The notes under the pieces were generated by a model. That model had not been told where the DNA came from, did not search any database, and saw only the letters and a list, made by a program, of their open reading frames with translations. DNA of 64,000 bases from IMG/VR virus record IMGVR_UViG_3300013116_000108, positions 1 through 64,000 of that record; one strand, given 5' to 3'. The stretch's first letter is position 1; the number at the start of each line of letters is the position of its first letter. Below, one piece after another: positions 6,176 to 54,341 of this stretch. Made by a program: the position numbers and the translations under genes.

Positions 6176-6763
6176 ATGGCATTAATACCAATTGTAGTAG
6201 AACAAACATCAAAAGGCGAACGTAGTTACGACATTTATAGTAGACTATTAAAAGACCGTATTGTAATGTTAAGCGGTGTAGTTGAAGAAAATATGTCAAA
6301 TGCCATTGTTGCTCAATTACTATTTTTAGAAAGTCAAGATCCTGAAAAAGATATTACACTATATATTAACTCACCTGGTGGTTCAGTAACTGCTGGAATG
6401 AGTATGCTTGATACAATGAACTTTATTAAACCTGATATCTCAACTGTAGTTATGGGCCAGGCTTGTTCGATGGGTTCATTGTTAGCAAGTTCAGGTACTA
6501 AAGGTAAACGTTTTATGTTACCTAATGCTAGACACATGATACATCAACCCTTAGGTGGATTTAGTGGACAAGCAACTGACGTAGAAATTAGAGCAAACGA
6601 GTTGTTACGTTGGAAGAAAGTATTAACTGAAGTGTATGTTACTAACACAGGCAAAGACTTTGATACATTAAGTAAAGACATGGATCGTGATAACTTTATG
6701 ACAAGTGAAGAAGCGGTTGCTTACGGACTTGCTGATAAAATTATTGCCGAAAGAGAAAAGTAA
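6176..6763 (+). CDS. clpP: ATP-dependent Clp protease proteolytic subunit
   Basis: [33 protein letters not shown], catalytic Ser in QACSMG, His in MIHQP, Asp in RDNFM. Confidence 0.97.
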
Positions 6764-6800
6764 ATTAATGATGTCACTTAAATATAGTAGTGAACCAGTA

Positions 6801-7703
6801 ATGAAAAAAGAAGAGAAAAAGTTTTATTACTCTGAAATATTTCATTCTATCCAAGGAGAAGGTCATTATACAGGTGTTCCTACTGCTTGGATACGGTTCT
6901 TTTTATGTAACTTACAATGTAGTGGATTTGGACAAGTAGATCCAACTAACCCAGATACATATGAACTTCCATTTGAAGATTTTGATGTATCAAGTGTAAG
7001 TCGTGTTGAAGACTTGCCAGTATGGGAGAAAGGTTGTGATAGTTCTTATACATGGGCTAAGAAATTTAAAAGTTTAATGGGCTATGAAACACCTACTACA
7101 CTAGCAAATAAAATTGTAGATGTTTTAAAAAATGAAAGTAATCCACAAGGCTTGTTTTTACATCCGGTAAGTAAACAACATCAACACTTATGTTTTACAG
7201 GTGGTGAACCGTTGATGTTAACAGGACAAATGGCTACAATGGGAATTTACAATGAACTTAAAAGACAAAACAATTTACCAAGTTCAATGACATTTGAAAC
7301 AAATGGAACACAACCATTAAAGCCTGAATTTATAGAATGGGCAAACACTATACCTGAAGAAGTATTCTTTTCGTGTAGTCCTAAATTGTTTACAGTATCA
7401 GGCGAGAAACCAGAAAAGGCTATTAGACCAGAAATTGTAGGCAAGTATATGTCAGCATCTATTAAAGGACAACTAAAATTTGTAGTTGGAGATAAAGACA
7501 GAGAGTGGGATGAAATGGAATCAGCAATACAGAAATTTAGAGATGCTGGTGTTGATTGGCCTGTATGGGTTATGCCCACAGGAGCAAGAGAAGAAGAACA
7601 AACTGCTGGTGCCGGTAAGGTGGCAGAAAAGGCATTTAAACGAGGATATAATGTAGCGGCAAGAGTACACGTTTATTTGTTTGGAAATGCTATAGGAACA
7701 TAA
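6801..7703 (+). CDS. queE: 7-carboxy-7-deazaguanine synthase (QueE-like radical SAM)
   Basis: YSEIFHSIQGEG..G.P..WIRF, CNLQC...GCDS, FTGGEP, FETNGT, SCSPK, RVHVYLFGN; start uncertain (6768 or 6801). Confidence 0.85.
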   Translation: MKKEEKKFYYSEIFHSIQGEGHYTGVPTAWIRFFLCNLQCSGFGQVDPTNPDTYELPFEDFDVSSVSRVEDLPVWEKGCDSSYTWAKKFKSLMGYETPTTLANKIVDVLKNESNPQGLFLHPVSKQHQHLCFTGGEPLMLTGQMATMGIYNELKRQNNLPSSMTFETNGTQPLKPEFIEWANTIPEEVFFSCSPKLFTVSGEKPEKAIRPEIVGKYMSASIKGQLKFVVGDKDREWDEMESAIQKFRDAGVDWPVWVMPTGAREEEQTAGAGKVAEKAFKRGYNVAARVHVYLFGNAIGT

Positions 7704-8009
7704 ATGACTCTAAGAGATATTTGGTATACTGCTGAACAAATTGCTTTAAAATTTACACTAAAGCCTCAAGTACAGAAGTTTGGGGAAGTAACAATTAAAA
7801 TAGCACATACTATTGTTTTACTTGTTTTATGTATATGTGTTTTTATATATCTTGGTTTTACAGCATTATTTAAAATGCTACAAGATAAGTTTAAAACAAA
7901 TGAAATTGAAGATCAGGTTACTGAAATTTCCGAAGATGATTATAAACCTAAAAAAGCAGAATTAGATGAACCTGAATTTGTTAAAAGACTAAGAAAGAAT
8001 GGTATATAG
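7704..8009 (+). CDS. Hypothetical membrane protein
   Basis: Single hydrophobic segment. Confidence 0.6.
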   Translation: MTLRDIWYTAEQIALKFTLKPQVQKFGEVTIKIAHTIVLLVLCICVFIYLGFTALFKMLQDKFKTNEIEDQVTEISEDDYKPKKAELDEPEFVKRLRKNGI

Positions 8010-8017
8010 GAGAATAT

Positions 8018-8380
8018 ATGGAAAATCCATTTAAAAATTTGTTTAGCAAAAAGGCTAAAACAAAAGAAGAGCATAAAACTGAAAAAGATATTGCTACAGA
8101 TAAGCAACAACCTTATGTAAATGTAATAGGATTAAGTTTAGATGATCCTAAGAAACCAGACCAAGGTGCTTTTGAACTTGATTGGAATATTTACTTTGTT
8201 AATCAATTGAGGAAAGAAGGGTACCAAGGTATTAAAGATGAAGATGTTGTTGACCAATGGTTCCAAAAAGTTTGTAGGAATGTAGCATTAGAAACTTGGG
8301 AAAATTACGACGCTGATCCTGAAAACAGAACTACTGTTAATAAGGTAAGGCGAGACGATGGTAAAACTGAGGTTAGTTAA
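8018..8380 (+). CDS. Hypothetical phage protein
   Basis: AGGAG RBS; GAFELDWN motif. Confidence 0.7.
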   Translation: MENPFKNLFSKKAKTKEEHKTEKDIATDKQQPYVNVIGLSLDDPKKPDQGAFELDWNIYFVNQLRKEGYQGIKDEDVVDQWFQKVCRNVALETWENYDADPENRTTVNKVRRDDGKTEVS

Positions 8381-8382
8381 AA

Positions 8383-12060: not shown

Positions 12061-13170
12061 ATGTCAATAACAGAACACAGAACAGTAACTTCCGAGGGTG
12101 CTAAAAGAAGCATAACTAAAGCATTTGCTAAAAAGCGTCCTATTTTCCTTTGGGGGCCAATGGGTATTGGTAAATCCGAACTAGCACAAGGTTTGGTTGA
12201 TTCTGGTGAACTTGGTAATGCTTTACTAATTGATCTTAGAATGGCACTTATGGAACCTACAGATATTAAAGGTATTCCTTTTTATAATAAAGACACAGGT
12301 ACAATGGATTGGGCTCCACCAGTTGATTTACCTAGTAAAGAATTAGCAAAACAATATGACACAGTTGTATTGTTTTTAGACGAACTTAACTCTGCTCCTC
12401 CAAGTACACAGGCGGCGGCATACCAGTTAGTTCTTAACAGACGTGTTGGTAATTATGTATTACCTGAAAACGTTGTTATGATTGCGGCGGGTAATAGAGA
12501 AACTGATAAAGGTGTTGTTTACAGAATGCCTGCTCCGTTGGCAAACAGATTTTTACATTTGGAAATGAGAGTTGATTACGACAGTTGGTTGAACTGGGCC
12601 GTTAACAACGATATTCATTCTGATGTTATTGGACACATTACAGTTCATAAACAAGACTTGTTCGACTTTGATCCTAAAGGTTCAAGTCGTTCTTTTGCTA
12701 CACCTCGTTCTTGGACATTTGTTTCAGAACTAATCGATGATGATGATTTAGATGATGAAACATTTACTGATTTGGTTTCTGGTGCGATTGGTGAAGGCAT
12801 TGCTGTTAAGTTTATGGCAACTAGGAAGGCTAGAAACAAACTTCCTAACCCAACTGAAATTTTAGAAGGTAAGATTAAAACACTTGACAAAGATGTTGAA
12901 ATGTCAGGTCGTTATTCACTTACAATGTCTATGTGTTATGAGTTACGTGAAAGAGCTCAAAAATCAGGAGCAAGTACTCAAAAATATATTGAGAACTTCT
13001 TAAGGTTTATGATGGACAACTTCGATGCCGAACTTACTGTAATGGGAGCTCAGACTGCCATTGTAAGATACGGTATTAATGTTAAGCCTAAAGAACTTCC
13101 GAGCTTTAACGAGTTCCACGAAAGGTTCGGTAAGTATATTAGAAAAGCTCGTTCAATGGATGAGAAATAG
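12061..13170 (+). CDS. MoxR/CobS-like AAA+ ATPase
   Basis: Walker A GPMGIGKS, Walker B LFLDELN, sensor IAAGNR, PLANRF. Confidence 0.88.
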   Translation: MSITEHRTVTSEGAKRSITKAFAKKRPIFLWGPMGIGKSELAQGLVDSGELGNALLIDLRMALMEPTDIKGIPFYNKDTGTMDWAPPVDLPSKELAKQYDTVVLFLDELNSAPPSTQAAAYQLVLNRRVGNYVLPENVVMIAAGNRETDKGVVYRMPAPLANRFLHLEMRVDYDSWLNWAVNNDIHSDVIGHITVHKQDLFDFDPKGSSRSFATPRSWTFVSELIDDDDLDDETFTDLVSGAIGEGIAVKFMATRKARNKLPNPTEILEGKIKTLDKDVEMSGRYSLTMSMCYELRERAQKSGASTQKYIENFLRFMMDNFDAELTVMGAQTAIVRYGINVKPKELPSFNEFHERFGKYIRKARSMDEK

Positions 13171-13176
13171 GAGGCT

Positions 13177-14475
13177 TTGATGTCAAATATTAATCCTACC
13201 GCAAAAGAAGATATCAAACCTGGCTGTGAAGTTGGGTTTGAAACTGACCCTAAGTTAGATCTTAAGGTACGTGAGCAACTAGTTCAAGCAAGAATTGGTT
13301 TGCTTATACTTCATCCTTTTTATGGTAACCTTGCTTTAAGACTTAAACTTGTTAATGCTGATGCTTGGTGTCCAACTGCCGCAACTGATGGCAGACACTT
13401 TTTTTACAATACTAAGTTTATTGAAAAACTAACAGACGGTGAAATACTATTTTTAATGGGACATGAAATACTTCATGTAGTTTACGACCATATGGCTAGG
13501 AACCAAGGACGTAACCCACAGTTATCAAATATTGCCGCTGACTATTGTGTTAATGGTGACTTGGTACAAAACAAAGTTGGTACTCCTATTAAAGTAGTTC
13601 CTATTTTACACGAAACAAAATATTACGGTTGGTCATTTGAAAAAGTATATGACGACCTTTATGAGAATGCTGAAAAAATTGACATGGACGACTTGCTTGA
13701 AAAAATGTTAGATGAACATTTAGATGGTGATAGCGGAGATGGTGATTCAAACGGTAATCAAGAAACTGACGAAAACGGTAACCCTGTTAGTAAGAGCAAA
13801 CCTAAACTATCTGAAAAAGATCGTAGACAAATTAAAGATGAAATGAAAGAGGCAGTATTAAATGCGGCCGCGGCGGCTGGTAATAGTGCTGGTAACATTC
13901 CACAAGGTGTTAAAAGACTTATTGAACAATGGACCGCTCCTAAATTAGATTGGAGAGAAATACTTCAACAACAGATACAATCGACTATTAAGAACGACTT
14001 TACTTTCCAAAAGATTAACAGACGTTCTTGGCACATGGATGCCATTCTTCCGGGAATGGACAATGATGAAAAAATTGATATTTGTCTTTGTGTTGACATG
14101 TCAGGATCTGTTTCAAGTACAATGATAAAAGATTTCTTTAGTGAAGTTAAAGGTATTACTGATATGTACGAAGACTTTAACATTCAACTATGGTGCTTTG
14201 ATACTGAAGTATATGGATATAAGAAATTTGATCCAACTAACATTGATGAATTGTTAGACTATACTCCGTTAGGTGGAGGTGGTACAGAATTTGATGTTAA
14301 CTGGACATTTATGAAAGAACATGACATTGTACCTAAGAAATTAATTATGTTCACAGACGGTTACCCGTGGGGTAGTTGGGGTGACGAAAACTACTGTGAT
14401 ACAGTTTTTATTATTCACGGTGCTAAAGATGTTACTGCTCCGTTTGGTGTTACTTGTCATTACGAGGAGGCTTAA
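13177..14475 (+). CDS. Metallopeptidase-like plus vWA domain protein (DUF2201-type AAA partner)
   Basis: TAATDG, HEILH zinc motif, MIDAS-like CVDMSGS, GGGGTEF, FTDG. Confidence 0.85.
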   Translation: MMSNINPTAKEDIKPGCEVGFETDPKLDLKVREQLVQARIGLLILHPFYGNLALRLKLVNADAWCPTAATDGRHFFYNTKFIEKLTDGEILFLMGHEILHVVYDHMARNQGRNPQLSNIAADYCVNGDLVQNKVGTPIKVVPILHETKYYGWSFEKVYDDLYENAEKIDMDDLLEKMLDEHLDGDSGDGDSNGNQETDENGNPVSKSKPKLSEKDRRQIKDEMKEAVLNAAAAAGNSAGNIPQGVKRLIEQWTAPKLDWREILQQQIQSTIKNDFTFQKINRRSWHMDAILPGMDNDEKIDICLCVDMSGSVSSTMIKDFFSEVKGITDMYEDFNIQLWCFDTEVYGYKKFDPTNIDELLDYTPLGGGGTEFDVNWTFMKEHDIVPKKLIMFTDGYPWGSWGDENYCDTVFIIHGAKDVTAPFGVTCHYEEA

Positions 14476-23522: not shown

Positions 23523-24707
23523 TTAAACACCGTAATCTTCTTGTCCGCCTTCACGTTCAATATCTAGTGTAACACAATGCCATCCTGCGTCCCAGAAGTG
23601 CCTGTGTCTGTTTGGTACATGGATCATGTCAATACCATGTGAGTTGAATGTTTTTTCTAATTCTAAATTCTCAGCATTTACTACTGCTGTTTTTTCGTCT
23701 AGCATTAACAGATTAACATCAAAAACTGTTTCTTCTACAAACCCAACCCAATCGTCTAACCAGGTTTCTACAAAGTCTGTAAACTCAGCATTATCTTCTT
23801 CACCAGGCATCCACCATTTACCTTCGTTATGCTTTTTAATATCTAAAAACGGTCTTACTTGATTTAAGTTGCTTTCTGGTAAGAATATTTTATCCCAACC
23901 TGGGAAAGATTCAGCGTAATGTCCAATATCTTGTGTTGTTAATAATACGCCCGGTTTTAGCACATTAAAAACAGCATCATTATGACCACCAATAAAAACA
24001 CCTTTATAGTTGAACTGCGGATATGCCAATTCCATGTAGTCAGCAATATCTACTGCCTGTTGAGTATCAGCAAAACAAGTCTTTCCTACTCTAGTTAATT
24101 CCGGAGCACAAAACCCTGTCATTCTATCTGTTGTATGTTGCTCTTGTTCTAATTCTAATAATGTGTCAATATCGCTATCTTTAATACCTAACCGACCTAA
24201 TCTATTTCTGTGATTTGCTGTTGTTCTTGTAAACTTCTTTTTATTTTTAACAATGCTCCAATCAAAGTTATCACCAAACCATTTCTCAAGCAATGGAACC
24301 CATGGTTTGGATTCAAAAGCACTTCCAGTCATTACTACTTGATTGCCCATTGTAACAAAATCATCACGCGGATTAAGTGGTGGGACAGGTAGTTGATTTC
24401 TGCCCTTTTCATGTTGACCATGTTTATCACTTCCCATGCCCAACTTACCTTCTTCATCCAAATAGTCCATTATACTTGTTTTGTATCCAAGTTCTTCTGT
24501 TGTAGTAGTATATGTTTTAGCACCGAAGTCTTCTACTACCTTTTTTAAGTTATCTAAATCTTCTAATGTTTCACTAGCAATACGCTGAAGACAATCTCTT
24601 GCTTTAGAGTTTTTAACGTCTTCAAAAAATTCTGGAGGATAAGTTGTACCAATTACTAATTGTTTGAGCGGTTGGAATTCGCTCCATGAGTTTACTTTAT
24701 TTGTCAT
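23523..24707 (-). CDS. Amidinotransferase (pentein; glycine/inosamine-phosphate amidinotransferase-like) copy 1
   Basis: VNSWSEFQPLKQLVIG, PRDD, GGHND, FDVN, AGWHCVTLD. Confidence 0.85.
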   Translation of the reverse strand: MTNKVNSWSEFQPLKQLVIGTTYPPEFFEDVKNSKARDCLQRIASETLEDLDNLKKVVEDFGAKTYTTTTEELGYKTSIMDYLDEEGKLGMGSDKHGQHEKGRNQLPVPPLNPRDDFVTMGNQVVMTGSAFESKPWVPLLEKWFGDNFDWSIVKNKKKFTRTTANHRNRLGRLGIKDSDIDTLLELEQEQHTTDRMTGFCAPELTRVGKTCFADTQQAVDIADYMELAYPQFNYKGVFIGGHNDAVFNVLKPGVLLTTQDIGHYAESFPGWDKIFLPESNLNQVRPFLDIKKHNEGKWWMPGEEDNAEFTDFVETWLDDWVGFVEETVFDVNLLMLDEKTAVVNAENLELEKTFNSHGIDMIHVPNRHRHFWDAGWHCVTLDIEREGGQEDYGV

Positions 24708-25059
24708 TTAATGATTCTCTGTGTTTAGTTAAATCGTCGGGGAAATCCCTGTATAAGAAATGCTGTATTGTTTCCAGTTCAACATACTTGTTAAAGCCGT
24801 GATGCTCGTCTTCAATCTTGTTTTCGTTTGTTACTACACTAGACATGGCATCATCTAGTTGTTGCATATTTTTAAATTCCATATCAATACGAAATTCCGG
24901 TAATTCCATTGAACGAAATCCTAATTTCATTCTTGTAATTCTATATGATTCCATTCGTCCTGCTTGAACTAACTTATCTAAGAATTTAGTCATATATCTT
25001 ATGAATTCATGAGCTGTGACCTCTTCGGTATGATCTGAGTAAATAGTATAAACATCCAT
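24697..25059 (-). CDS. DUF6614-like dimeric alpha-beta barrel protein
   Basis: YRITRMKLGFR..LPEFRIDMEF..MQQLDDAM..LYRDFPD; start moved to MDVY. Confidence 0.6.
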   Translation of the reverse strand: MDVYTIYSDHTEEVTAHEFIRYMTKFLDKLVQAGRMESYRITRMKLGFRSMELPEFRIDMEFKNMQQLDDAMSSVVTNENKIEDEHHGFNKYVELETIQHFLYRDFPDDLTKHRESLNDK

Positions 25060-25125
25060 TTGATAACTTCCTTTTGTATTTAATATATAAGTAATTATCA
25101 GAGCATATAACAGAAAAACAAATTC

Positions 25126-25809
25126 ATGAAAGTTTATTACGATCACATTTACGGAACCATGGAAAACATGGATATCCGTTGTACAGAAATATTAGCAAAA
25201 CACGTTAAACCAGAAGAAGAATTAAAAGCATTAGACATGGGCTTTTTGTGGTCTAAGGTTGCTGACGATGGCGAAATATGGTATAACAGTCGTTCAGTTA
25301 GAGTTGATTTAAGCACCTGGAAAACAAGAAGAAGTAAGCCTGTTTGGAATAATGTAAAAGAACTTAAAAGAACTGATCCTCGCTGGCCTACTATGTACCG
25401 CGATTATATAAAAAGTAAAGGCTTGTATCCGTACCCAGGTGATGACGAACTACACAAAGAAAACAAACTGCTTGGCTACTTTGATGACAATGACAAATTA
25501 TTAGGATTGTCTAAATTACGTGAATATGTGGGAGCCTGGGAGACTTGTGTATTTGTACATGACCATTCTATTCCTAACTTCGGACGTATAACACTTGACC
25601 ATGAAATTCATCTTGCTACTATGTTAGGACATAAACACATTTACATTGGTTCTGGTTATGAGAAAACTTGTATATACAAAGGCAAGTTAAAAGGTTTTGA
25701 ATTTTGGACTGGCGAAAAATGGAATAGCAATAAAGAAGATTACATTAAACTTTGTCAGCGTGATAGTCTTGTTAGGACTTTACAGGATCTTCATGATGTC
25801 TCCAGTTAA
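25126..25809 (+). CDS. ATE1/Bpt-like aminoacyl-tRNA-protein transferase
   Basis: ALDMGF, SRSVRVDL, MYRDY, FGRITLDHEI..A..LGHKHIYIG.GY...CIYK...GFEFW match the ATE_N/ATE_C pattern (SLG...L..I..A...G..Y.YLGY...C.KM.YK). Confidence 0.7.
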   Translation: MKVYYDHIYGTMENMDIRCTEILAKHVKPEEELKALDMGFLWSKVADDGEIWYNSRSVRVDLSTWKTRRSKPVWNNVKELKRTDPRWPTMYRDYIKSKGLYPYPGDDELHKENKLLGYFDDNDKLLGLSKLREYVGAWETCVFVHDHSIPNFGRITLDHEIHLATMLGHKHIYIGSGYEKTCIYKGKLKGFEFWTGEKWNSNKEDYIKLCQRDSLVRTLQDLHDVSS

Positions 25810-26284
25810 CTACATCATCTAAATTTTCTTTACTCCAAACATCATAGTATCCTCTCTTTTTAAGTATACCACTAAACATTTGTATTTTACTCAATCGTTG
25901 CATTAACATAATAGGATATTTCCCATTGTTCATTATTATACCGTTAATGTTTTCTTCTTCATCTGGGTGGTCTTCTAACACCACAAAATCCTGCTCCATT
26001 AAATAAAGTTTATTTGTATTTTCTACCATAACACTTAAATTAGTAGAATTAATATTAGGAACAAAAATACAACATACATCTGTATCCTCATTCCAGCGTT
26101 TTGCTTTTTCTTTAAGGTATGAGTCAATTTTAATTTCACATACTTCAAACTCTACTTTGTTATCTATTATTGCCTGCTTGGCAAAAGGACATGGCGGAAA
26201 GTTGTTTAGGTCTGGATTTGGTTGCGATACAAAATCGTCTATCCATTTTAGGATATAAGTTTGTGCTTCTTCTAAATTAAACAT
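25772..26284 (-). CDS. DUF1415-like protein
   Basis: WI..FV..PN..LNNFPPCPFAK, EDHPD, YPIMLMQRL. Confidence 0.55.
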   Translation of the reverse strand: MFNLEEAQTYILKWIDDFVSQPNPDLNNFPPCPFAKQAIIDNKVEFEVCEIKIDSYLKEKAKRWNEDTDVCCIFVPNINSTNLSVMVENTNKLYLMEQDFVVLEDHPDEEENINGIIMNNGKYPIMLMQRLSKIQMFSGILKKRGYYDVWSKENLDDVVNWRHHEDPVKS

Positions 26285-28872: not shown

Positions 28873-29022
28873 ATGAGTAAAGACGACCAACGTGCTTGGA
28901 ATATGTTTAAAATATCAAACGGTGGACAATTATGGACCAGTTGTGATTTATGTAAAACGTTTTGTCTTGGCTTAATTGCTGGACTTTGTATAACTTTTAT
29001 ACTTGTTGCTATTATTTTGTAG
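28873..29022 (+). CDS. 49-aa Cys-containing membrane peptide
   Basis: AAGGGA RBS; CDLC and C-terminal TM helix. Confidence 0.5.
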   Translation: MSKDDQRAWNMFKISNGGQLWTSCDLCKTFCLGLIAGLCITFILVAIIL

Positions 29023-31307: not shown

Positions 31308-31318
31308 GTTAGTATTTA

Positions 31319-33836: not shown

Positions 33837-33843
33837 ATTTCAT

Positions 33844-39997: not shown

Positions 39998-40306
39998 TTA
40001 TTCCTTTTCTATTTTTACTTGTAATGGGAAACCTCTGCTTCGAGCAAGTACTGTTACTTCTATTCCTTTTTGCTCAGCAATTTCATAAGGTAATACGGCT
40101 ACTACAGCCATGCCATCCTCGTGGATTTTTACTGTAATGCCTTCAGCGTCATCTGGATTGTAATCAAATATGTCTAATAATGTTTCAACAACAAATTCCA
40201 TTGTTGTTAATTCGTCATTCATATAAATGACTTTATACAGGCCAGGTTCAGTAACTTTTATTCGTGTTACTGTGGACGGTTTTTCTTTTATTTGTGTGTC
40301 GCTCAT
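39998..40306 (-). CDS. clpS: N-degron adaptor ClpS
   Basis: PGLYKVIYMNDELTTMEFVV, VHE/IHEDG.AVV, EIAEQK, FPL. Confidence 0.93.
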   Translation of the reverse strand: MSDTQIKEKPSTVTRIKVTEPGLYKVIYMNDELTTMEFVVETLLDIFDYNPDDAEGITVKIHEDGMAVVAVLPYEIAEQKGIEVTVLARSRGFPLQVKIEKE

Positions 40307-40330: not shown

Positions 40331-40359
40331 ATTATAACAAAAATTGAGTATGTTGTCAA
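40331..40359 (-). promoter_or_regulatory. Sigma70-type promoter for clpS operon
   Basis: Perfect TTGACA-N17-TATAAT. Confidence 0.85.
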
Positions 40360-40365
40360 GAAAAA

Positions 40366-40400
40366 AGATAGGATTAGCCAAAATAAACTAACCCTATCTT
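40366..40400 (-). terminator. Probable intrinsic terminator after hsp20
   Basis: AAGATAGG...CCTATCTT inverted repeat with T-run on minus strand. Confidence 0.6.
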
Positions 40401-40416
40401 CAATTGTTAACTAGAA

Positions 40417-40845
40417 TTATTTGATACTAATTGTTCTTGGCTTTTTGGCCTCAGGAACAATTTTCTCCAATGATACTTTTAGTAAGCCATCTTTTAATTC
40501 CGCCCCATTTACAACTACGTCATCAGCAATAGTGAAAGATCTCTTGAATTGACGTTTTGAAATTCCTCTGTGTAATACACTTGGATCTTCGCTTTCGTCT
40601 TTTTCACTTTGAACTGAATTAACAGTTAGATTGTTATCAGCATATTTTACTTCAATGTCTTTTTTGCCAAATCCGGCTAAAGCCATTTCGATGTCATATG
40701 TGAAGTCACCTGTTTTTACGATATTGTATGGTGGAAAATTCACTTGTGGCATATCTGTCATACGTTCAAATGTATCGAACATATCGTCGAAGCCTACTGT
40801 GAATGGTTTAAGGTTATTAAAGATAGATAGTCTTGCGTTTGTCAT
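40417..40845 (-). CDS. Small heat-shock protein Hsp20/IbpA
   Basis: FPPYNI, MALAGF, LHRGISKRQF.RSF, LKDGLL, PEAKKPRTI. Confidence 0.95.
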   Translation of the reverse strand: MTNARLSIFNNLKPFTVGFDDMFDTFERMTDMPQVNFPPYNIVKTGDFTYDIEMALAGFGKKDIEVKYADNNLTVNSVQSEKDESEDPSVLHRGISKRQFKRSFTIADDVVVNGAELKDGLLKVSLEKIVPEAKKPRTISIK

Positions 40846-40903
40846 TGTTTTCTCCTTATATTAAGCAAGTTAACTTTGTGTACCCGACCTTTCGGCGTAC
40901 AAT
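40846..40903 (-). promoter_or_regulatory. ROSE-like RNA thermometer in hsp20 5' UTR
   Basis: UUGCU opposite SD AAGGAG with bulged G; upstream GAAA-capped hairpin. Confidence 0.55.
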
Positions 40904-40925
40904 AGTATTTAGCATACTATACTAT

Positions 40926-40955
40926 ATTATATAAGCATTAATGATAAAAAGTCAA
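40926..40955 (-). promoter_or_regulatory. Sigma70-type promoter for hsp20
   Basis: TTGACT-N18-TATAAT; also TAAATA at 40906-40911. Confidence 0.65.
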
Positions 40956-40980
40956 GTCTTTTTTGGAAATAAATCCAAAA

Positions 40981-41006
40981 AAAATCCCCCAATTAAGGGG
41001 GACTTT
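40981..41006 (-). terminator. GC hairpin terminator
   Basis: TCCCCC-AATTAA-GGGGGA followed by a long T-run on the minus strand. Confidence 0.7.
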
Positions 41007-42894: not shown

Positions 42895-43200
42895 CTAGTA
42901 CATTCTCTTTTGAGAAAATCCCCATTGTGCTTCTTGTTCACGTTGTTTCTTTAACCAACGATTACGGCCTGCTTTTTTGGCTAGTCTTTTCTTTTCGCTA
43001 GGTTTTATAAAATACTGCCTATCTCGACATTCTTGTAAAGTATTGTCTGCTTGGAGTTTTTTCTTTAGTTTTCTTAATGCCTTTGTGACATCATTGTTGT
43101 GAACTATAACAGTTGTTCCACCTGTTAAATCTTGAGCTCTTTTAGGTTGATTTCTATTACCAAAGCCTGCTCTGTTATTGCTTTTTCTATTTACAAACAT
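42895..43200 (-). CDS. rpsU: Ribosomal protein bS21
   Basis: V.V.NNDVTKALRKLKKK....E...RQYF.KPSEKKR. Confidence 0.88.
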   Translation of the reverse strand: MFVNRKSNNRAGFGNRNQPKRAQDLTGGTTVIVHNNDVTKALRKLKKKLQADNTLQECRDRQYFIKPSEKKRLAKKAGRNRWLKKQREQEAQWGFSQKRMY

Positions 43201-44363
43201 TAAGCCTCCTGTACGTCTGTGTCATTAATAATTACTTCCTTTCCTTTAAGTTGATCTAACTCGTAATAGTATTCAAGCAAAGTATTTTCTAATATACCTT
43301 TTAATGCTCTAGCACCTACCTTATATTGTAACGCAAGTTCGACTATTTTGTCAAGTGCTTTCTCCGAAAATATCAAACTAACATTATCTAAATCAAAATA
43401 GAACCTAGTTTGCTCAATTAGGTTATTATCAATATCAGCCAATACTTGTTTTAATTCATCTTTGGAAAGTTCTGTTGTTTGAACAACAACTGGAAAGCGA
43501 CCAATAAATTCAGGTATCATTCCAAAGTCAATTAACTCGCTTGAAATTAGTTTACTTTGGCCTCCGTGTGTTTCTCCAAACCCAATAGTATTTGTTTTTT
43601 GGCTGTCCATTCCAACAAATGCTCCACTTCCAATAAACAAAATCTTACTAGTATCTACTTCAATCATTTCTTGCTGTGGATGTTTTCTTCCACCTTGTGG
43701 TGCTACTCTAACAGTTGTACCTTCAACTAATTTTAACAATGCTTGTTGTACACCTTCGCCTGAAACATCTCTAGTAATTGAAACGTTCTCACTTTTCCTG
43801 CCAATTTTATCAATTTCATCTAAAAATACAATACCTTGTTCTGCTCTTGCTACATTGTAATCTACTTTCATTAGCAAAGAACTAATAATACTTTCAACAT
43901 CATCACCAACATACCCACTTTCAGTTAAACTTGTAGCATCAGCAATTACAATAGGCACATCTAAAAACTTAGCAATTTGTTTTGCCATAAAAGTTTTACC
44001 ACTACCAGTAGGACCAATTATTAATTGATTATTCTTTTCAATAGTACCTTTTCTATCATACATTAATCTCTTGTAGTGATTTACTACACCTACTGCCATA
44101 TGACGTTTTGCTTTATGTTGTCCAACTACTGTTTCGTCTAAAAATGCTACAATCTCTTTTGCTGTTTTGGGTTCTAATTCCTTTGCCCATTGCTTTGCCT
44201 TTTCATCTGTGAGGACTTTACTACACAAATCTATACATTCATCACAAATACCAACACCTTCTGCTACAATAATCTTGTATACTTGGTCTTTTGTTTTGCC
44301 ACAAAAATTACACTGACTGACTGAACGAATTTGATCTATACTAGTTGATTTATCATCTGTCAT
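43200..44363 (-). CDS. clpX: ATP-dependent Clp protease ATP-binding subunit ClpX
   Basis: Zinc finger CNFCGK..CDEC, GPTGSGKT, GYVG pore loop, DEIDK, RDVSGEGVQQALLK, RKH loop, IGF loop; start 44363 or 44393. Confidence 0.96.
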   Translation of the reverse strand: MTDDKSTSIDQIRSVSQCNFCGKTKDQVYKIIVAEGVGICDECIDLCSKVLTDEKAKQWAKELEPKTAKEIVAFLDETVVGQHKAKRHMAVGVVNHYKRLMYDRKGTIEKNNQLIIGPTGSGKTFMAKQIAKFLDVPIVIADATSLTESGYVGDDVESIISSLLMKVDYNVARAEQGIVFLDEIDKIGRKSENVSITRDVSGEGVQQALLKLVEGTTVRVAPQGGRKHPQQEMIEVDTSKILFIGSGAFVGMDSQKTNTIGFGETHGGQSKLISSELIDFGMIPEFIGRFPVVVQTTELSKDELKQVLADIDNNLIEQTRFYFDLDNVSLIFSEKALDKIVELALQYKVGARALKGILENTLLEYYYELDQLKGKEVIINDTDVQEA

Positions 44364-44730
44364 TTGAGAGCCTTTTTTGTAATATCCAGTCAACTGGAAC
44401 TGTTAGTTTTCTATTATTTAATGAATCGTAATTCTCTTCATGATGTATATCATCACACCACCAAACGTTTGGCATAGACATCAAGTACCCTGTAACAATT
44501 TTATTTTCATATTCATTGCTTACAATAACTACAGATGATCTAGTTGCTGTATTAACAATCCAATCAACTTTGCTATTTTGTTCGCCTATGTGTAAACTAT
44601 AATCGCCGTATTTAGGTAATTCCTTAATATATTGCTCAACTGTCCAGTTATCACAACCTACAAGGAATACACTTTCTTGTTTACCAAACCAATAATCTGG
44701 TTCTGTTACTACTGTTACATTATTGTCCAA
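44353..44730 (-). CDS. Hypothetical protein
   Basis: Operon-packed. Confidence 0.6.
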   Translation of the reverse strand: MDNNVTVVTEPDYWFGKQESVFLVGCDNWTVEQYIKELPKYGDYSLHIGEQNSKVDWIVNTATRSSVVIVSNEYENKIVTGYLMSMPNVWWCDDIHHEENYDSLNNRKLTVPVDWILQKRLSNDR

Positions 44731-51210: not shown

Positions 51211-52251
51211 CTATTCTCTCCATAGTTCGCCGAAATCGAGATCGTCTTTTCTATTAAAGAGATCTTCAATGTTGCTTTGTCTTTCTATATCAAAAGTAAC
51301 ACAATGACTACCACCGTCCCAAAAATATTTGTGTCGCAAAGGACAATGTATTACTTCAATTCCATTTGTATTTAACAATCTTGTAACACTATCGTTTACA
51401 TGACTAGTAATAACAGTCTCAGGATTAATATGTAACATGTTAACTTCAAATGTAGTTTCTTGACTATAACCAATCCAATGTGTTAGATACTGCTTAATAA
51501 AATCTACTGCTTCTTGCTGTGGCTCGTTAACTAACTTAAAACTAAAATCTTCCCATAATCTATGATAACGTTCTAAATCGTTTGGCATATAATGAGGGAG
51601 TTTATGTATTTCCCAACCTTTGAACGTATCAGAATATTGATCTACTTCATAACGTGTTAGTAATAATCCAGGCTTTATAGGACATACACTACTATCACTA
51701 TGTCCCCCAATACTTGCTGTATGTATGTTTACATCTAGATGGACCAACTCTCTATATTTCTTTATCCATTCAACAAATGGCAAGTTTAATTTATTTTCTG
51801 TATCTATTAATAAATCTTTACCTAACCTAAAAACATCACTAGCACAAAAGTAATCAAAAAGTATAACATCATCTTTATATGATGCTAGTGCTTCTTTGCC
51901 ATAATTTTCCCAGGCCCAATTAGCACCAACAAATATTTTATCATGCCAACGTAATAAATGATTTCTTACAGCAAACGGTTGTCCTGGTAATTGTTTACGT
52001 TCTGCTATTGTTTGTTCAGCAAGAGTAAACCCTTCGTTATCCATGTATGTTTTAACGTCTGGTCGTACCACCTTAACACCTTGCGATTTTAATACCGAAC
52101 ACATGTTGTTTAAATCTTCTTGTGTTTCTTCTGTAATTTGTACTAGACAATTTTTTATTTGGGCAGGCAGTCCCTCGTAAACACTTGTAGGTAAAACGTC
52201 ACCCACTAATACTTTAGATAACTCTCCCCAATTATGAAAACAATTTTCCAT
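51211..52251 (-). CDS. Amidinotransferase copy 2
   Basis: WGELSKVLVG, AVRNH, GGHSD, FEVN, GGSHCVTFD. Confidence 0.8.
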   Translation of the reverse strand: MENCFHNWGELSKVLVGDVLPTSVYEGLPAQIKNCLVQITEETQEDLNNMCSVLKSQGVKVVRPDVKTYMDNEGFTLAEQTIAERKQLPGQPFAVRNHLLRWHDKIFVGANWAWENYGKEALASYKDDVILFDYFCASDVFRLGKDLLIDTENKLNLPFVEWIKKYRELVHLDVNIHTASIGGHSDSSVCPIKPGLLLTRYEVDQYSDTFKGWEIHKLPHYMPNDLERYHRLWEDFSFKLVNEPQQEAVDFIKQYLTHWIGYSQETTFEVNMLHINPETVITSHVNDSVTRLLNTNGIEVIHCPLRHKYFWDGGSHCVTFDIERQSNIEDLFNRKDDLDFGELWRE

Positions 52252-53000
52252 TATTCTAAACCCTTTATCAATTTTTTGTTTTCTACATTATACCATCGAA
52301 TTGAATTTACAATATCCTCATCCGGAATAACTGGTTCTAGTTTATAATAATCATCCACTTCTTTAAAACAACTAATATCACCATCAATTAAATCATCATA
52401 GTTGAAAATTATGTCGGCATATTTTACTTCTAAATCCATAATATTTCTAATTTTTAATCTTTCTATATGGGGTATTGGTAATAATTCCTTAGCACCTAAT
52501 TCTAAAGGTGAAGGCCCTTCTTCATGCCAAATTTCTTTTTCTCTGATATCCATATTTTTATCGTCACGTAAATCAAAGTGATCTTTCATTAATGATTTTA
52601 CATCTCTTAACTGACGACAAAACAATGCTGTCTTTATATTCTTTGTTGTGAGAAAAATATTAGGACATTCAATTCCTTTTACTTTTTTCATTGACTCATT
52701 TAAATTTGGAAAAATTTGATGGTCAAGTATAAAAGAATTTGTGTTTGGAACTTCAAACGTTTCTAGATATTTTTCTAATACTGTTGAGTCATAATGTTTA
52801 GTTTCTATCCATTCTTCACCATACTCTAAATCTATCTGTAACCTAGGCATTTCTGGTAGGCGCCAATATGTTTCAGGGAAGTGATATTCATTCCAGTAAC
52901 TATTAGATTTGGGCTTGTTTACAAATCCCCATCTCCAAAATAAAAGTCTTTGAAAAAAATGACCACCCATACCAGGTTGAAAAGAAAAGTATGCTATCAT
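52251..53000 (-). CDS. Hypothetical protein, P-loop/sulfotransferase-like N-terminus
   Basis: YFSFQPGMGGHFFQRLL. Confidence 0.45.
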   Translation of the reverse strand: MIAYFSFQPGMGGHFFQRLLFWRWGFVNKPKSNSYWNEYHFPETYWRLPEMPRLQIDLEYGEEWIETKHYDSTVLEKYLETFEVPNTNSFILDHQIFPNLNESMKKVKGIECPNIFLTTKNIKTALFCRQLRDVKSLMKDHFDLRDDKNMDIREKEIWHEEGPSPLELGAKELLPIPHIERLKIRNIMDLEVKYADIIFNYDDLIDGDISCFKEVDDYYKLEPVIPDEDIVNSIRWYNVENKKLIKGLE

Positions 53001-53016
53001 ACTAGTAATTATTCAT

Positions 53017-53054
53017 AAAAAAAAGCAGACACCATCTTAATGATATCTGCTTTT
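53017..53054 (-). terminator. Probable intrinsic terminator after porin
   Basis: AAAAGCAGA...TCTGCTTTT inverted repeat with T-run. Confidence 0.65.
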
Positions 53055-53074
53055 AAGATAAAACTACAAATAGT

Positions 53075-53983
53075 TTAGAATGAGTATTTAATTCCTAATG
53101 CCATTTGTGTAGTATCAGTACCAGAGTCAACATCAGTTAACTGGTACTCAGCGTATGTTGACAAAGATTCAGATAAGTCACGGCTAACTCCCGCTGTGTA
53201 GTAGTTGCCTGTACCTTCTTTATCTTGTAAACTAACAGCAATCGTGTTTCCAGCGATTGAAGTAGATGCTGAGTATTCAAGACCTGTTAAGTCTGTAGTT
53301 GCTGTATCTTTGTACGAGTATGTACCTGCTAGTGTAATACCAGCAACGTCAATACTTGCAGAAGCAATGTTGTACTTAACAACATTTACTTTGTCATCAA
53401 CCATAGCACCAGAAAGTGCTACTGGACCTACGTCCATTGAAGCAGATACATCAATAACATCAAGACCATCCTTACCTGTAGAACCATCAATTACTGCCAT
53501 AGCATTAATTGTAACTGGGCCTACTGAGTTAGAATATTTTACAGAGTTTGAACTACGGTCAGCATATTTAAATGTGGCGTTTCCACCATAGACGTTAAAT
53601 ATGTTAGTTTTACTAACTCCAGCACCTGGATTTGCTTGTCTACCAGCCGCTACTGAACCTAAAGTACCTGCATCTACACCAACGTATGCTAGTCTAGAGT
53701 CAAATGTATCAGATCCTGAATCATCGGCGTCAACGCCAACCTCTACTTTACCGAATCCAGTAAGACCGCCTTTTTCGTTGCCCTCAGCATCAACTAATGT
53801 TTCGCTAAATTCAACACCGATCTTAGATCCGTTGTTTTGTGCCTTTAAGTGTGCCTTTCCTGTAGAATCATCATCGTTAGAAACCATGTAATTTACAGAA
53901 CCATAAACGTTAACATCAGCAAGTACCGGAGCACTTAAAAATGATAAGCCTAAAGCAACTGTGGCAATTAGTATATTTTTCAT
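53075..53983 (-). CDS. Gram-negative trimeric porin
   Basis: Signal peptide; VNVYGSVN, SKIG, SRLAYVG, GRQ, SVKY; ends LGIKYSF. Confidence 0.9.
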   Translation of the reverse strand: MKNILIATVALGLSFLSAPVLADVNVYGSVNYMVSNDDDSTGKAHLKAQNNGSKIGVEFSETLVDAEGNEKGGLTGFGKVEVGVDADDSGSDTFDSRLAYVGVDAGTLGSVAAGRQANPGAGVSKTNIFNVYGGNATFKYADRSSNSVKYSNSVGPVTINAMAVIDGSTGKDGLDVIDVSASMDVGPVALSGAMVDDKVNVVKYNIASASIDVAGITLAGTYSYKDTATTDLTGLEYSASTSIAGNTIAVSLQDKEGTGNYYTAGVSRDLSESLSTYAEYQLTDVDSGTDTTQMALGIKYSF

Positions 53984-54037
53984 ATTTTTTTCCTTTACAT
54001 ATATGTAAAGACCCTCGCCACTAGAGGCGAGAGCCCT

Positions 54038-54341
54038 CTTCTAGAAGATTTCTGTTGATAGGCATCTTCCAAACCCCGAGCAACTATGCCGCTAAGGCAA
54101 AGTCCTCATGAAACACATTATCGTTTGCGTTTATACGTTTTGTTCGCGTTAACCGAGCTTACATCCGGGCAACTCCACTCTCCTAATAACTACCTGTCGA
54201 TCCTTTTTCAACCCCATCATAAACACATTCATATAATCACACCAAAATCTGTGTTGTTACTTTTGGAATGTGTTTATGGTGGAGTTGCTGGGTACCGCCC
54301 CCAGGTCCAGATTAGCGTTTGAATAACTTCATCGTTACGAC
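54038..54341 (-). ncRNA. ssrA: Circularly permuted two-piece tmRNA; acceptor piece ends CCA at 54277, coding piece starts at 54215; tag ANDNVFHEDFALAA (54128-54084)
   Basis: ...GGCGGTACCCAGCAACTCCACCA precedes GGGGTTGAAAAAGGATCGAC; acceptor GGGGTTG/CAACTCC with G3:U70; 13-bp inverted repeat bounding the intervening segment; outer ends approximate. Confidence 0.93.

What the first reader, a model, noticed from the sequence alone, without database searches (positions are those of the whole stretch)
6176..54341. A phage-encoded tag-and-destroy proteolysis system: tmRNA, ClpXP, ClpS and an ATE/Bpt-like transferase
Seen, scattered across the window: clpP (6176), ATE/Bpt-like transferase (25126), clpS (39998), hsp20 (40417), clpX with intact RKH, GYVG and IGF loops (43200), and a tmRNA whose tag ends in LAA (54038). 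Known: ClpX recognises the C-terminal LAA of ssrA tags; Bpt adds Leu to N-terminal Asp/Glu; ClpS binds N-terminal Leu/Phe/Tyr/Trp. Inferred: the phage carries both writers (C-terminal and N-terminal degrons) and readers, so it could redirect host proteolysis, e.g. against defence proteins, cell-cycle regulators or stalled products. ClpS normally docks on ClpA, which is not in this window, so a host ClpA or a new partner is implied. I am not aware of this whole set being described as one phage system.
Basis: partly seen in the sequence, partly recalled or inferred. Interest (0 to 1): 0.88.

Follow-up and report, generated by a model that had tools for sequence, protein, structure and literature searches.

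The report
Jumbo phage protein-degradation gene toolkit
A roughly 204-kb marine jumbo phage carries working-looking copies of bacterial protein-degradation and ribosome-rescue genes (ClpX, ClpP, ClpS, a small heat-shock protein, a tmRNA). It also carries an undescribed phage relative of N-terminal aminoacyl-transferases, but these sit in separate, independently inherited modules rather than forming one proven system.

Summary
All six features exist at the stated coordinates and look functional. The window is the first 64 kb of IMG/VR contig 3300013116_000108 (204 kb), a marine jumbo phage. Its replicative helicase is closest to PA5oct-like and Atu_ph07-like phages.

- **Clp module.** clpX–rpsU(S21)–hsp20–clpS is conserved on one strand in 80 of 80 sampled IMG/VR ClpS loci, usually with clpP about 3 kb downstream. 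The cultured phage PA5oct has the same order and also encodes ClpP, ClpA and FtsH. This part is already known.
- **tmRNA.** It is a two-piece alphaproteobacterial type. Such tmRNAs are known from pelagimyophages and are common in related contigs. Their tags almost always end in ALAA.
- **ClpS.** The N-degron pocket and the ClpA-docking residues are invariant in 57 phage sequences. No clpA or smpB lies in the window or in the next 11 kb.
- **"ATE/Bpt-like" ORF.** It is a remote Bpt/ATE homologue by family profile, hhalign and predicted fold, and the catalytic Lys is invariant. It lacks the ATE_N Cys and Arg-Arg motifs and has an ATE1-type Glu where Bpt has Gln.
- **Its context.** It sits in its own conserved three-gene cassette and is never near ClpS. 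It is absent from cultured Clp-bearing phages.

"One system" is therefore unproven. The phage transferase family is the new lead.

The parts
6143..6763 (+). clpP, the proteolytic subunit. It lies directly after a QueD/PTPS gene and about 33 kb from the rest of the Clp module.
   Evidence: Pfam CLP_protease E=1.2e-79. The Ser/His/Asp motifs are conserved in 41 related phage ClpP sequences. It is 60% identical to ClpP of Atu_ph07.
24697..25146 (-). DUF6614 protein, divergent neighbour of the ATE-like gene. Its likely true start is the ATG at about 25059.
   Evidence: Pfam DUF6614 E=3.8e-23. It lies next to the ATE-like gene in 43 of 80 IMG/VR loci. The start region was read.
25126..25809 (+). 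Divergent Bpt/ATE-family aminoacyl-tRNA-protein-transferase-like protein (227 aa), antisense to all its neighbours.
   Evidence: A family of 176 cluster representatives. Of 61 members, 38 hit Pfam ATE_C and 32 hit NCBIfam arginyltransferase. The family profile matches KlAte1 at E=1.6e-7. hhalign against an Acinetobacter Bpt gives probability 97.7%. The AF2 model has pLDDT 93.7, and its top Foldseek hit is human ATE1. K185 is invariant.
25772..26284 (-). 170-aa protein of unknown function (invariant Cys-Pro, weak glutaredoxin/DUF6875 similarity). It is convergent with the ATE-like gene and overlaps its 3' end.
   Evidence: Present next to the ATE-like gene in 70 of 80 loci, almost always in the same convergent arrangement. 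PHROG 28122. No solved relative.
39998..40306 (-). clpS, the N-degron adaptor.
   Evidence: Pfam ClpS E=2.4e-24. Best solved matches are Agrobacterium ClpS2 and Caulobacter ClpS. The pocket and ClpA-docking residues are invariant in 57 phage ClpS sequences.
40331..40401 (-). Terminator-like hairpin after hsp20, followed by a perfect sigma-70 consensus promoter (TTGACA-17-TATAAT with TG) in front of clpS.
   Evidence: consensus scan only. A similar terminator plus an 11/12 promoter precedes hsp20 at 40926-41006.
40417..40845 (-). hsp20, a small heat-shock protein, always paired with clpS.
   Evidence: Pfam HSP20 E=2.6e-18. It is adjacent to clpS in 80 of 80 IMG/VR loci and in PA5oct and Phosso.
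42895..43200 (-). Ribosomal protein S21 with a basic N-terminal extension, immediately downstream of clpX.
   Evidence: Pfam Ribosomal_S21 E=2.5e-15. It is found between clpX and hsp20 in 57 of 80 loci and in PA5oct.
43200..44393 (-). clpX, the AAA+ unfoldase with an N-terminal C4 zinc-binding domain.
   Evidence: E=1e-110 to E. coli ClpX. The zinc-finger Cys residues, Walker A/B, GYVG, RKH and IGF motifs are conserved in 52 phage ClpX sequences.
53993..54378 (-). Two-piece (permuted) alphaproteobacterial-type tmRNA with tag ANDNVFHEDFALAA.
   Evidence: ARAGORN. Rfam alpha_tmRNA 117 bits and tmRNA_permuted 110.6 bits.

Best explanation
The window is the left arm of a roughly 204-kb marine jumbo myophage. 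Its accessory region holds three separately inherited sets of host-derived proteostasis and translation genes. They are not one dedicated operon.

**1. The Clp module (clpX-S21-...-hsp20-clpS, with clpP moved elsewhere).** This module is old in the lineage. Inferred mechanism:
- Phage ClpX hexamers dock on phage ClpP through their IGF loops and degrade ClpX substrates.
- S21 biases ribosomes towards phage mRNAs.
- Hsp20 holds aggregating proteins.
- ClpS binds N-terminal Leu/Phe/Tyr/Trp and docks on the N-domain of a ClpA. That ClpA could be phage-encoded elsewhere in the genome, as in PA5oct, or the host's. Docking shifts ClpAP away from ssrA-tagged and other substrates towards N-degron or aggregated substrates.
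- Consensus sigma-70 promoters in front of S21, hsp20 and clpS suggest early expression by host RNA polymerase.

**2. The two-piece tmRNA.** It would be charged by host AlaRS and delivered by host SmpB. It rescues stalled ribosomes and adds a ...FALAA tag that ClpXP (and ClpAP) can read. This couples ribosome recycling to amino-acid recovery during infection of a nutrient-poor host.

**3. The Bpt/ATE-like transferase.** It probably moves an amino acid from an aminoacyl-tRNA to an amino group of an acceptor. The invariant catalytic Lys and the dupli-GNAT fold support this. The ATE1-like Glu in the donor pocket hints at a basic donor such as Arg or Lys. Its partners are more likely its two cassette neighbours than ClpS.

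**Shown and inferred.** Gene identities, motif conservation, synteny and distribution are shown. All activities, partners and timing are inferred.
For: - **Gene identities and intact motifs:**
- **Phage nature and lineage:** the window coordinates equal those of a 204,100-bp IMG/VR contig. PHROG and Pfam hits include RNR, DnaB, primase, Mtd_N tail-fibre and QueE. The helicase is 52% identical to PA5oct-like phages.
- **Clp module synteny:** among 80 ClpS loci, Hsp20 is present in 80, ClpX in 65, S21 in 57 and ClpP in 50, all on one strand and in one order. PA5oct has the same order.
- **ClpA in relatives:** PA5oct, Atu_ph07 and Phosso encode ClpA.
- **ClpS:** docking and pocket residues are invariant.
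- **Promoters and terminators:**
- **tmRNA:** it is common in related contigs and its tags end in ALAA.
- **ATE-like protein:**. Its separate cassette. It does not co-localise with Clp genes across 6.06 Mb of loci.
Against: - No activity was measured.
- smpB and clpA were not found in the window or in the next 11 kb. The other roughly 130 kb of the genome could not be read, so the ClpS partner is unknown.
A functional link over a distance is therefore not excluded. One contig carries the ATE-like gene and ClpA 11 kb apart.
- The conserved clpX-to-clpS order could reflect shared ancestry of one phage lineage rather than functional coupling.
- The ClpA-docking residue identities (E79, E82, K84 of E. 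coli ClpS) come from my memory of the ClpS-ClpA N-domain structures.
Confidence: 0.6

Rival explanations
1. All parts form one integrated phage "tag-and-destroy" system. tmRNA writes C-terminal degrons and the ATE-like enzyme writes N-terminal degrons. Phage ClpXP and ClpS(-ClpA)P read them, and the system is aimed at host defence or regulatory proteins.
For: All components are present in one genome arm and look functional. The tag ends are conserved as ALAA. The ATE-like protein is a real Bpt/ATE relative. One marine contig has the ATE-like gene and ClpA within 11 kb. In three loci a ClpP-like gene is next to the ATE-like gene.
Against: The ATE-like gene never lies within 10 kb of ClpS or ClpX in 160 loci. 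It is absent from cultured phages that have the full Clp set. The acceptor-recognition motifs of Bpt/ATE are missing, and the donor pocket is not Bpt-like. tmRNA tagging marks stalled chains, not chosen targets. clpX is dispensable in some S21-hsp20-clpS loci.
Confidence: 0.15
2. The ATE-like protein is not a protein N-terminal transferase. Like FemX or MprF, it would transfer an amino acid from aminoacyl-tRNA to a non-protein acceptor such as a cell-wall precursor, a lipid or a small molecule. It would work together with DUF6614 and the 170-aa thioredoxin-like neighbour.
For: The fold matches L-PGS/MprF, FemX and the L/F-transferase almost as well as ATE1. No ATE_N match exists, and the N-terminal recognition motifs are lost. 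The gene is tightly and widely linked to two proteins of unknown function.
Against: Sequence-level similarity points specifically to the Bpt/ATE family: Pfam ATE_C in 38 of 61 members, NCBIfam arginyltransferase in 32 of 61, and hhalign to Bpt at E=2e-12. The alignment to Bpt begins in the ATE_N-end motif, with the Arg of CxxCR conserved in 60 of 61 members.
Confidence: 0.25
3. Phage ClpS acts mainly as an inhibitor or re-programmer of host ClpAP. It would block degradation of ssrA-tagged or phage proteins by ClpA, leaving phage ClpXP as the only reader of the tag. It would not serve as a delivery adaptor for newly written N-degrons.
For: From established knowledge, E. coli ClpS inhibits ClpAP degradation of ssrA-tagged substrates and ClpA autodegradation (Dougan et al. 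2002, cited in PMC6102473). ClpS is linked to clpX and not to clpA in phages: 65 of 80 ClpS loci have clpX, while ClpS lies next to phage ClpA in only 1 of about 150 phage ClpA loci. The docking residues are invariant.
Against: The N-degron pocket residues are also invariant. That argues that substrate binding is under selection, not only ClpA binding.
Confidence: 0.3

Closest known systems
Clp gene sets of cultured jumbo phages: Pseudomonas phage PA5oct (MK797984), Agrobacterium phage Atu_ph07, Sinorhizobium phage Phosso
   Same: PA5oct has QueD-clpX-S21-(2 ORFs)-hsp-clpS in the same order and on the same strand, plus ClpP. Phosso has sHsp-tdk-clpS. Atu_ph07 encodes ClpX, ClpP, ClpS, ClpA and ClpB (PMC6102473). 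The replicative helicase is 48-52% identical.
   Different: In the window clpP is moved about 33 kb away, next to QueD. Three unrelated ORFs lie between S21 and hsp20. No ClpA or FtsH is in the window. Those cultured phages have no detectable ATE-like gene, and no tmRNA resembling this one was found in them by blastn. They were not scanned for other tmRNA types.
Phage-encoded two-piece tmRNAs of pelagimyophages and Methylophilales phage Melnitz (PMC9004378); tmRNAs of huge phages (PMC7162821)
   Same: Alphaproteobacterial permuted type, in marine AT-rich myophages that also carry curli csgG/csgF. The only blastn hits in cultured phages are the Melnitz ssrA genes. The published idea that the phage tags proteins for degradation and recycling is the same.
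   Different: No glutamine riboswitch was found here (Rfam gathering scan). This phage is larger and also brings its own ClpXP and ClpS.
Bacterial Bpt (Leu-tRNA-protein transferase; named 'arginyltransferase' PRK01305 by NCBI) and eukaryotic ATE1
   Same: Dupli-GNAT fold, with human and yeast ATE1 as the top structural hits. The ATE_C core has the catalytic Tyr-Lys (K185 in 61 of 61 members). The Arg of the ATE_N-end CxxCR motif is kept. Its length of about 230 aa is like Bpt.
   Different: The window protein itself is below Pfam and NCBIfam detection. No member hits ATE_N. The Cys motifs and the GWRRSG Arg-Arg are absent; the second Arg of that motif is essential Arg80 of KlAte1 (PMC9351520). 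The donor pocket has Glu (ATE1-like) where Bpt has Gln. It is phage-borne and sits in a fixed antisense cassette with two unknown proteins.
Bacterial Leu/N-degron pathway (Aat/Bpt - ClpS - ClpAP) and ssrA-ClpXP pathway
   Same: The same reader components are present, with the same key residues. The tag ends in LAA.
   Different: In bacteria clpS is fused in an operon with clpA, and aat with bpt (seen). In these phages clpS is linked to hsp20, S21 and clpX, and the transferase is unlinked. SmpB, SspB and Aat were not found in the window.

Membership tests
ClpX | N-terminal C4 zinc-binding domain plus a single AAA+ module with Walker A/B | tested here: met
   Pfam zf-C4_ClpX E=7e-12 and AAA_2 E=2e-30. 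E=1e-110 to E. coli ClpX over residues 25-394. The Cys and Walker residues are invariant in 52 phage homologues.
ClpX | Pore-1 GYVG, RKH loop and ClpP-docking IGF loop | tested here: met
   GYVG in 52 of 52 sequences. RKH at 46, 51 and 49 of 52. I-G-F at 49, 52 and 52 of 52.
ClpP | S14 fold with the Ser-His-Asp triad | tested here: met
   Pfam CLP_protease E=1.2e-79. Ser, His and Asp are each present in 41 of 41 sequences.
ClpS | ClpS fold with N-degron pocket residues (E. coli N34, D35, T38, M40, H66) | tested here: met
   Pfam E=2.4e-24. Alignment to Caulobacter and Agrobacterium ClpS. All five positions are invariant in 57 phage ClpS sequences, except one Leu at the Met40 position; the D36 position varies (E/N/D).
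ClpS | Docking surface for the ClpA/ClpC N-domain (E. coli E79, E82, K84; residue roles recalled from memory) | tested here: met
   Glu, Glu and Lys are invariant in 57 of 57 sequences.
ClpS | A ClpA/ClpC partner encoded alongside | tested here: not met
   No ClpA in the window or in the next 11 kb. Relatives such as PA5oct encode ClpA elsewhere in the genome. The rest of this genome could not be read.
tmRNA (two-piece, alphaproteobacterial) | tRNA-like domain, permuted order, and a tag reading frame ending in a stop | tested here: met
   ARAGORN calls a permuted tmRNA with a 14-residue tag. Rfam RF01849 scores 117 bits (gathering score 50) and RF04321 scores 110.6 bits (gathering score 47).
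tmRNA (two-piece, alphaproteobacterial) | Partner SmpB | tested here: not met
   No SmpB Pfam hit among the window ORFs or in the next 11 kb. Host SmpB is presumably used.
Bpt/ATE aminoacyl-tRNA-protein transferase | ATE_C domain (GNAT core) with the catalytic Lys (KlAte1 Lys304) | tested here: met
   The window protein alone has no hit. The family does: 38 of 61 members hit PF04377, the profile matches KlAte1 at E=1.6e-7, and hhalign to Bpt gives E=2e-12. K185 is present in 61 of 61 members.
Bpt/ATE aminoacyl-tRNA-protein transferase | ATE_N domain with Cys motifs and the GWRRSG Arg that reads acidic N-termini (KlAte1 Arg80) | tested here: not met
   None of 61 members hit PF04376. The Bpt CxxC aligns to Ser/Val. 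The positions after the conserved Gly-Trp are Leu and Pro/other, not Arg-Arg. Placement of Arg80 in that motif is my inference from PMC9351520 numbering. No residue-level structural superposition was available.
Bpt/ATE aminoacyl-tRNA-protein transferase | Overall fold of aminoacyl-tRNA-dependent dupli-GNAT transferases | tested here: met
   The AF2 model has pLDDT 93.7. Foldseek top hits are human ATE1 8tzv (E=1.5e-6) and KlAte1, followed by L-PGS, FemX and LFTR.
Bpt/ATE aminoacyl-tRNA-protein transferase | Donor specificity (Leu for Bpt, Arg for ATE1) and transfer to a protein N-terminus | not testable with these tools
   There is only a hint. E160 (Glu in 43 of 61 members) aligns with ATE1 Glu277 and Bpt Gln (PMC9351520).
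Small heat-shock protein (Hsp20) | Alpha-crystallin domain | tested here: met
   Pfam HSP20 E=2.6e-18, residues 46-142.

The most novel reading that the evidence does not exclude
A large, undescribed family of phage aminoacyl-tRNA-protein transferases (found on at least 516 IMG/VR contigs) writes N-terminal degrons on host or phage proteins during infection. In jumbo phages that also carry ClpS, ClpA, ClpXP and tmRNA, it would complete a virus-encoded N- and C-degron proteolysis pathway that reshapes the host proteome.
Probability: 0.15. Interest if true: 0.85.

Novelty: new variant of a known kind. Interest (0 to 1): 0.5.

Why it matters
Jumbo phages are already known to bring their own Clp proteins and tmRNAs. 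This analysis adds two points.

- **The Clp genes form a conserved module.** The order clpX-S21-hsp20-clpS is shared from a cultured Pseudomonas phage to uncultured marine phages, and every functional residue is under selection. That makes it a tractable unit for genetics in PA5oct.
- **Phages widely carry a divergent Bpt/ATE-like transferase.** It sits in a fixed three-gene cassette, and no paper in the searched library describes it. If it modifies protein N-termini, it would be the first viral enzyme of the N-degron "writer" class. It would also show tRNA-dependent protein modification used as a phage takeover tool.

If it does not modify N-termini, it is still a new branch of aminoacyl-tRNA-dependent transferases with an unknown acceptor.

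Tried and rejected
- **AF2 on nine close homologues** gave a useless model (pLDDT 48.5). It was redone with a 61-sequence alignment.
- **Genome-level co-occurrence by intersecting contig lists** failed. Even the window's own contig was missing from the ClpS, p152 and ClpA result lists.
- **Finding clpA in the rest of this genome** was attempted three ways:
  - A ClpA search with E. coli ClpA and with a marine-phage ClpA profile did not return the window's own contig, which is inconclusive.
  - A look-up of the last window ORF failed because the window end truncates it.
  - An exact-match scan recovered 3.4 kb of the window's own contig and 11 kb of a near-identical contig beyond the window, with no ClpA or SmpB.
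- **The idea that ClpA sits just beyond the window** arose because ClpA precedes a p152 homologue in about 20 marine loci. Searches rejected it.
- **Host identification through a tag-shaped pattern in 185,579 genomes** gave only two MAG contigs. One carries a tmRNA, and the other a tRNA array that looks phage-like. No host was assigned.
- **Profile searches of the two cassette neighbours against PDB** found nothing.
- **No riboswitch** is present near the tmRNA.
- **Some "phage" records** (Acinetobacter phage MD-2021a and several short Listeria, Staphylococcus and Escherichia "phage" contigs) look like bacterial DNA. They were not counted as phage evidence.

Full report
**What the window is.** The ATE-like ORF recovered IMG/VR contig IMGVR_UViG_3300013116_000108 (204,100 bp) at 100% identity, with contig coordinates equal to window coordinates. 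The window is therefore the first 64 kb of a phage genome of at least 204 kb. The DNA is 32-37% G+C, and the coding strand switches at about 18 kb.

Phage character is supported by several hits:
- class I RNR
- a DnaB-like helicase and a Toprim primase
- an Mtd_N/pectate-lyase tail-fibre-like protein
- QueC, QueD and QueE
- UvdE
- several PHROG families

The helicase is 52% identical to PA5oct-like Pseudomonas jumbo phages and 48-50% to Phosso and Atu_ph07. Some accessory genes resemble pelagimyophages. These include csgG/csgF, a membrane coiled-coil protein whose closest match is in Pelagibacter phage Mosig, and the tmRNA (PMC9004378).

**Observation.** All six features are real.
- ClpP (6143-6763) scores Pfam E=1.2e-79.
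- ClpS (39998-40306) scores E=2.4e-24.
- Hsp20 (40417-40845) scores E=2.6e-18.
- ClpX (43200-44393) has the C4 zinc finger and an AAA+ module and matches E. coli ClpX at E=1e-110.
- The tmRNA (53993-54378, minus strand) is a permuted two-piece alphaproteobacterial type with tag ANDNVFHEDFALAA.
- The 227-aa ORF at 25126-25809 has no Pfam, PHROG or PDB hit by itself.

**The ATE-like ORF is a remote Bpt/ATE homologue.** An exhaustive HMM search found 176 cluster representatives of 210-270 aa. The following results place a 61-member alignment of this family (A2) with Bpt and ATE:
- 38 members hit Pfam ATE_C.
- 32 members hit NCBIfam "arginyltransferase" PRK01305, with a best E-value of 9e-18.
- The profile hits K. 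lactis and yeast ATE1 structures at E=1.6e-7.
- hhalign to an Acinetobacter Bpt gives 97.7% probability and E=2e-12.

With this alignment AlphaFold2 gives pLDDT 93.7. Foldseek ranks human ATE1 and KlAte1 first. Next come the other aminoacyl-tRNA-dependent dupli-GNAT transferases: L-PGS/MprF, FemX and the L/F-transferase.

The details differ:
- The catalytic Lys (KlAte1 Lys304) is K185, present in 61 of 61 members, and the preceding Tyr is present in 54 of 61.
- No member hits ATE_N.
- The Bpt CxxC aligns to Ser/Val.
- The Arg-Arg of GWRRSG is replaced by Leu and Pro/other. By my reading of the numbering in PMC9351520, that motif contains KlAte1 Arg80, which is essential for acidic N-termini.
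- The donor-pocket residue that is Glu277 in Arg-transferring ATE1 and Gln in Leu-transferring Bpt (PMC9351520) is Glu here (E160, 43 of 61 members).

Adding Leu to Asp/Glu to feed ClpS is thus not what the sequence suggests. Donor and acceptor are open, with a hint towards a basic donor.

**Genomic context of the ATE-like gene.** At least 516 IMG/VR contigs encode a relative. In the best 80 loci the gene sits in a fixed cassette:
- DUF6614 lies on the opposite strand upstream, in 43 of 80 loci.
- A 170-aa protein lies convergent downstream, in 70 of 80 loci, and its 3' end overlaps that of the ATE-like gene in the window and the loci read.

These loci share almost no other window genes, so the cassette occurs in diverse phages. 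None of the 80 loci has ClpS or ClpX within 10 kb, and three have a ClpP-like gene. Across 6.06 Mb of fetched loci, the ATE-like gene co-locates with a Clp gene only four times. One of those is a contig with ClpA 11 kb away.

Three family members used as tblastn queries found no homologue in 50,697 cultured phage records. The only exceptions were contigs labelled "Acinetobacter phage MD-2021a", which look bacterial and carry an aat-bpt operon. Cultured phages with the full Clp set therefore lack the transferase.

**The Clp module.** The 80 IMG/VR loci with the closest ClpS (57-88% identity) show a striking pattern:
- Hsp20 is immediately upstream in 80 of 80.
- ClpX is present in 65, S21 in 57 and ClpP in 50.
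- All lie on one strand in the order clpX-S21-hsp20-clpS-(about 3 kb)-clpP. Most of the missing cases are short contigs.
- Two upstream proteins are also conserved: a 544-aa membrane coiled-coil protein and a 163-aa protein.

The cultured phage PA5oct has QueD-clpX-S21-two ORFs-hsp-clpS, followed by an FtsH. It also has ClpP and a full-length ClpA. Phosso has sHsp-tdk-clpS.

In the window, clpP has moved to 6143, right after QueD. Three lineage-specific ORFs separate S21 from hsp20.

Functional residues are conserved across the clade:
- ClpX zinc-finger Cys, Walker A/B, GYVG, RKH and IGF in 52 sequences at 45-83% identity
- the ClpP triad in 41 sequences
- the ClpS pocket residues N34, D35, T38, M40 and H66, and the ClpA-docking E79, E82 and K84 equivalents, in 57 sequences (the docking roles are recalled from the ClpS-ClpA N-domain structures)

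Consensus scans place a 12/12 sigma-70 promoter before clpS, 11/12 promoters before hsp20 and S21, and terminator-like hairpins before the hsp20 and clpS promoters. This suggests early, host-polymerase-driven expression. It is an inference only.

**ClpA and SmpB.** Neither is in the window. Neither is in the 11 kb beyond its end, which I recovered from the window's own contig and a near-identical contig.

Phage ClpA is common. PA5oct-like, Rak2-like, Atu_ph07 and Phosso phages encode it, and at least 559 IMG/VR stretches encode a relative. In phages ClpA is not next to ClpS.

The ClpS partner could be a phage ClpA elsewhere in this genome or the host ClpA. The invariant docking residues argue against a wholly new partner, although linkage to clpX keeps that idea alive.

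**tmRNA.** A loose pattern scan of IMG/VR returned 120 stretches before hitting its limit. Of these, 76 carry ARAGORN two-piece tmRNAs. Many lie beside homologues of window backbone genes.

The tags vary in the middle but nearly all start with AND/ANN and end in ALAA, LAA, IAA or VAA. This is consistent with selection on the protease-recognition end.

In 26 ClpS loci no tmRNA lies within 10 kb. Two tmRNA loci have S21-hsp20-clpS about 8 kb away but lack clpX. The distribution is patchy, as expected for an accessory region.

Phage tmRNAs and the idea that they tag proteins for recycling are already published (PMC9004378, PMC7162821).

**Verdict.**
This is a jumbo-phage proteostasis and translation toolkit made of at least three separately inherited modules.
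- Two of the modules (Clp, tmRNA) are known kinds.
- The third is an undescribed phage branch of the Bpt/ATE family. Its link to ClpS is a hypothesis that genomic context does not support and that the missing whole-genome survey does not exclude.

Noticed in passing
window 23523-24707 (-), 51211-52251 (-), 54411-55652 (-): Three paralogues (33-38% identical) have a C-terminal GGxHCxTxDIxR motif and a weak arginine-deiminase hit. They look like guanidino-group-modifying or amidinotransferase-type enzymes. One lies beside the ATE cassette (also in about 10 of 80 loci) and one lies directly upstream of the tmRNA.
   Followed up: partly
window 29012-35968 (-): A cluster holds a CHASE2-adenylate/guanylate cyclase (699 aa), a FecR-domain protein, CsgG and CsgF curli-pore proteins and neighbours. 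The curli pore is known from pelagimyophages and Melnitz. The cyclase also recurs in 14 of 80 ClpS loci.
   Followed up: partly
window 42895-43200 (-): Ribosomal protein S21 has a 29-residue basic N-terminal extension. It overlaps the clpX stop codon and sits in this position in 57 of 80 related loci and in PA5oct. An 11/12 sigma-70 promoter lies inside the clpX 3' end.
   Followed up: partly
window 25126-25809 and neighbours; loci L007-L086: The ATE-like gene is antisense to its neighbours in nearly all loci, even at about 30% identity. Where the coordinates were read, its 3' end overlaps the 170-aa gene by about 10-40 nt. The divergent 66-nt spacer to DUF6614 has no obvious Shine-Dalgarno sequence.
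   Followed up: partly
window 40331-41006 (-): hsp20 and clpS each appear as a separate unit. Each follows a terminator-like hairpin and a near-perfect or perfect sigma-70 promoter.
   Followed up: no
window 12061-14475 (+): A MoxR-like AAA ATPase (PHROG 1297) is followed by a DUF2201 putative metallopeptidase with a VWA-like domain. This is another possible protein-remodelling pair.
   Followed up: no
window 43-3909 (+): A 1288-aa protein carries a subtilase (Peptidase_S8) domain at residues 671-992.
   Followed up: no
window 5674-7703 (+) and 39453-39995 (-): QueD/PTPS lies directly upstream of clpP, where PA5oct has QueD directly upstream of clpX. A QueE-like radical SAM gene follows, and a QueC hit lies elsewhere in the window. 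An Rv2179c-like 3'-5' exoribonuclease lies directly downstream of clpS (also in 15 of 80 loci).
   Followed up: no
window 63397-64000 and L453 5801-6868: The window end cuts the last ORF. The 194-aa ORF listed is really a 355-aa protein.
   Followed up: yes
loci L326, L337, L345-L354, L358, L360 and others: In about 20 marine phage contigs a full-length ClpA is followed about 1 kb downstream by a homologue of window ORF 62602-63060 (152 aa). In this genome that neighbourhood has no ClpA.
   Followed up: yes
phage collection records CAKLQH02/CAKLQF02 (Acinetobacter phage MD-2021a); L531: These "phage" records carry trxB, aat-bpt, clpS-clpA and clpP-clpX at about 60% identity to E. coli. They look like bacterial chromosome contigs and would inflate counts of phage Clp genes.
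   Followed up: partly
L287, L288 (genome contigs): A tag-shaped pattern hit only two MAG contigs. A "Methylophilaceae" contig has a two-piece tmRNA with tag ANDNFAREEFAVAA. A "Bacteroidota" contig has eight clustered tRNAs. Both may be phage DNA binned with bacteria.
   Followed up: no
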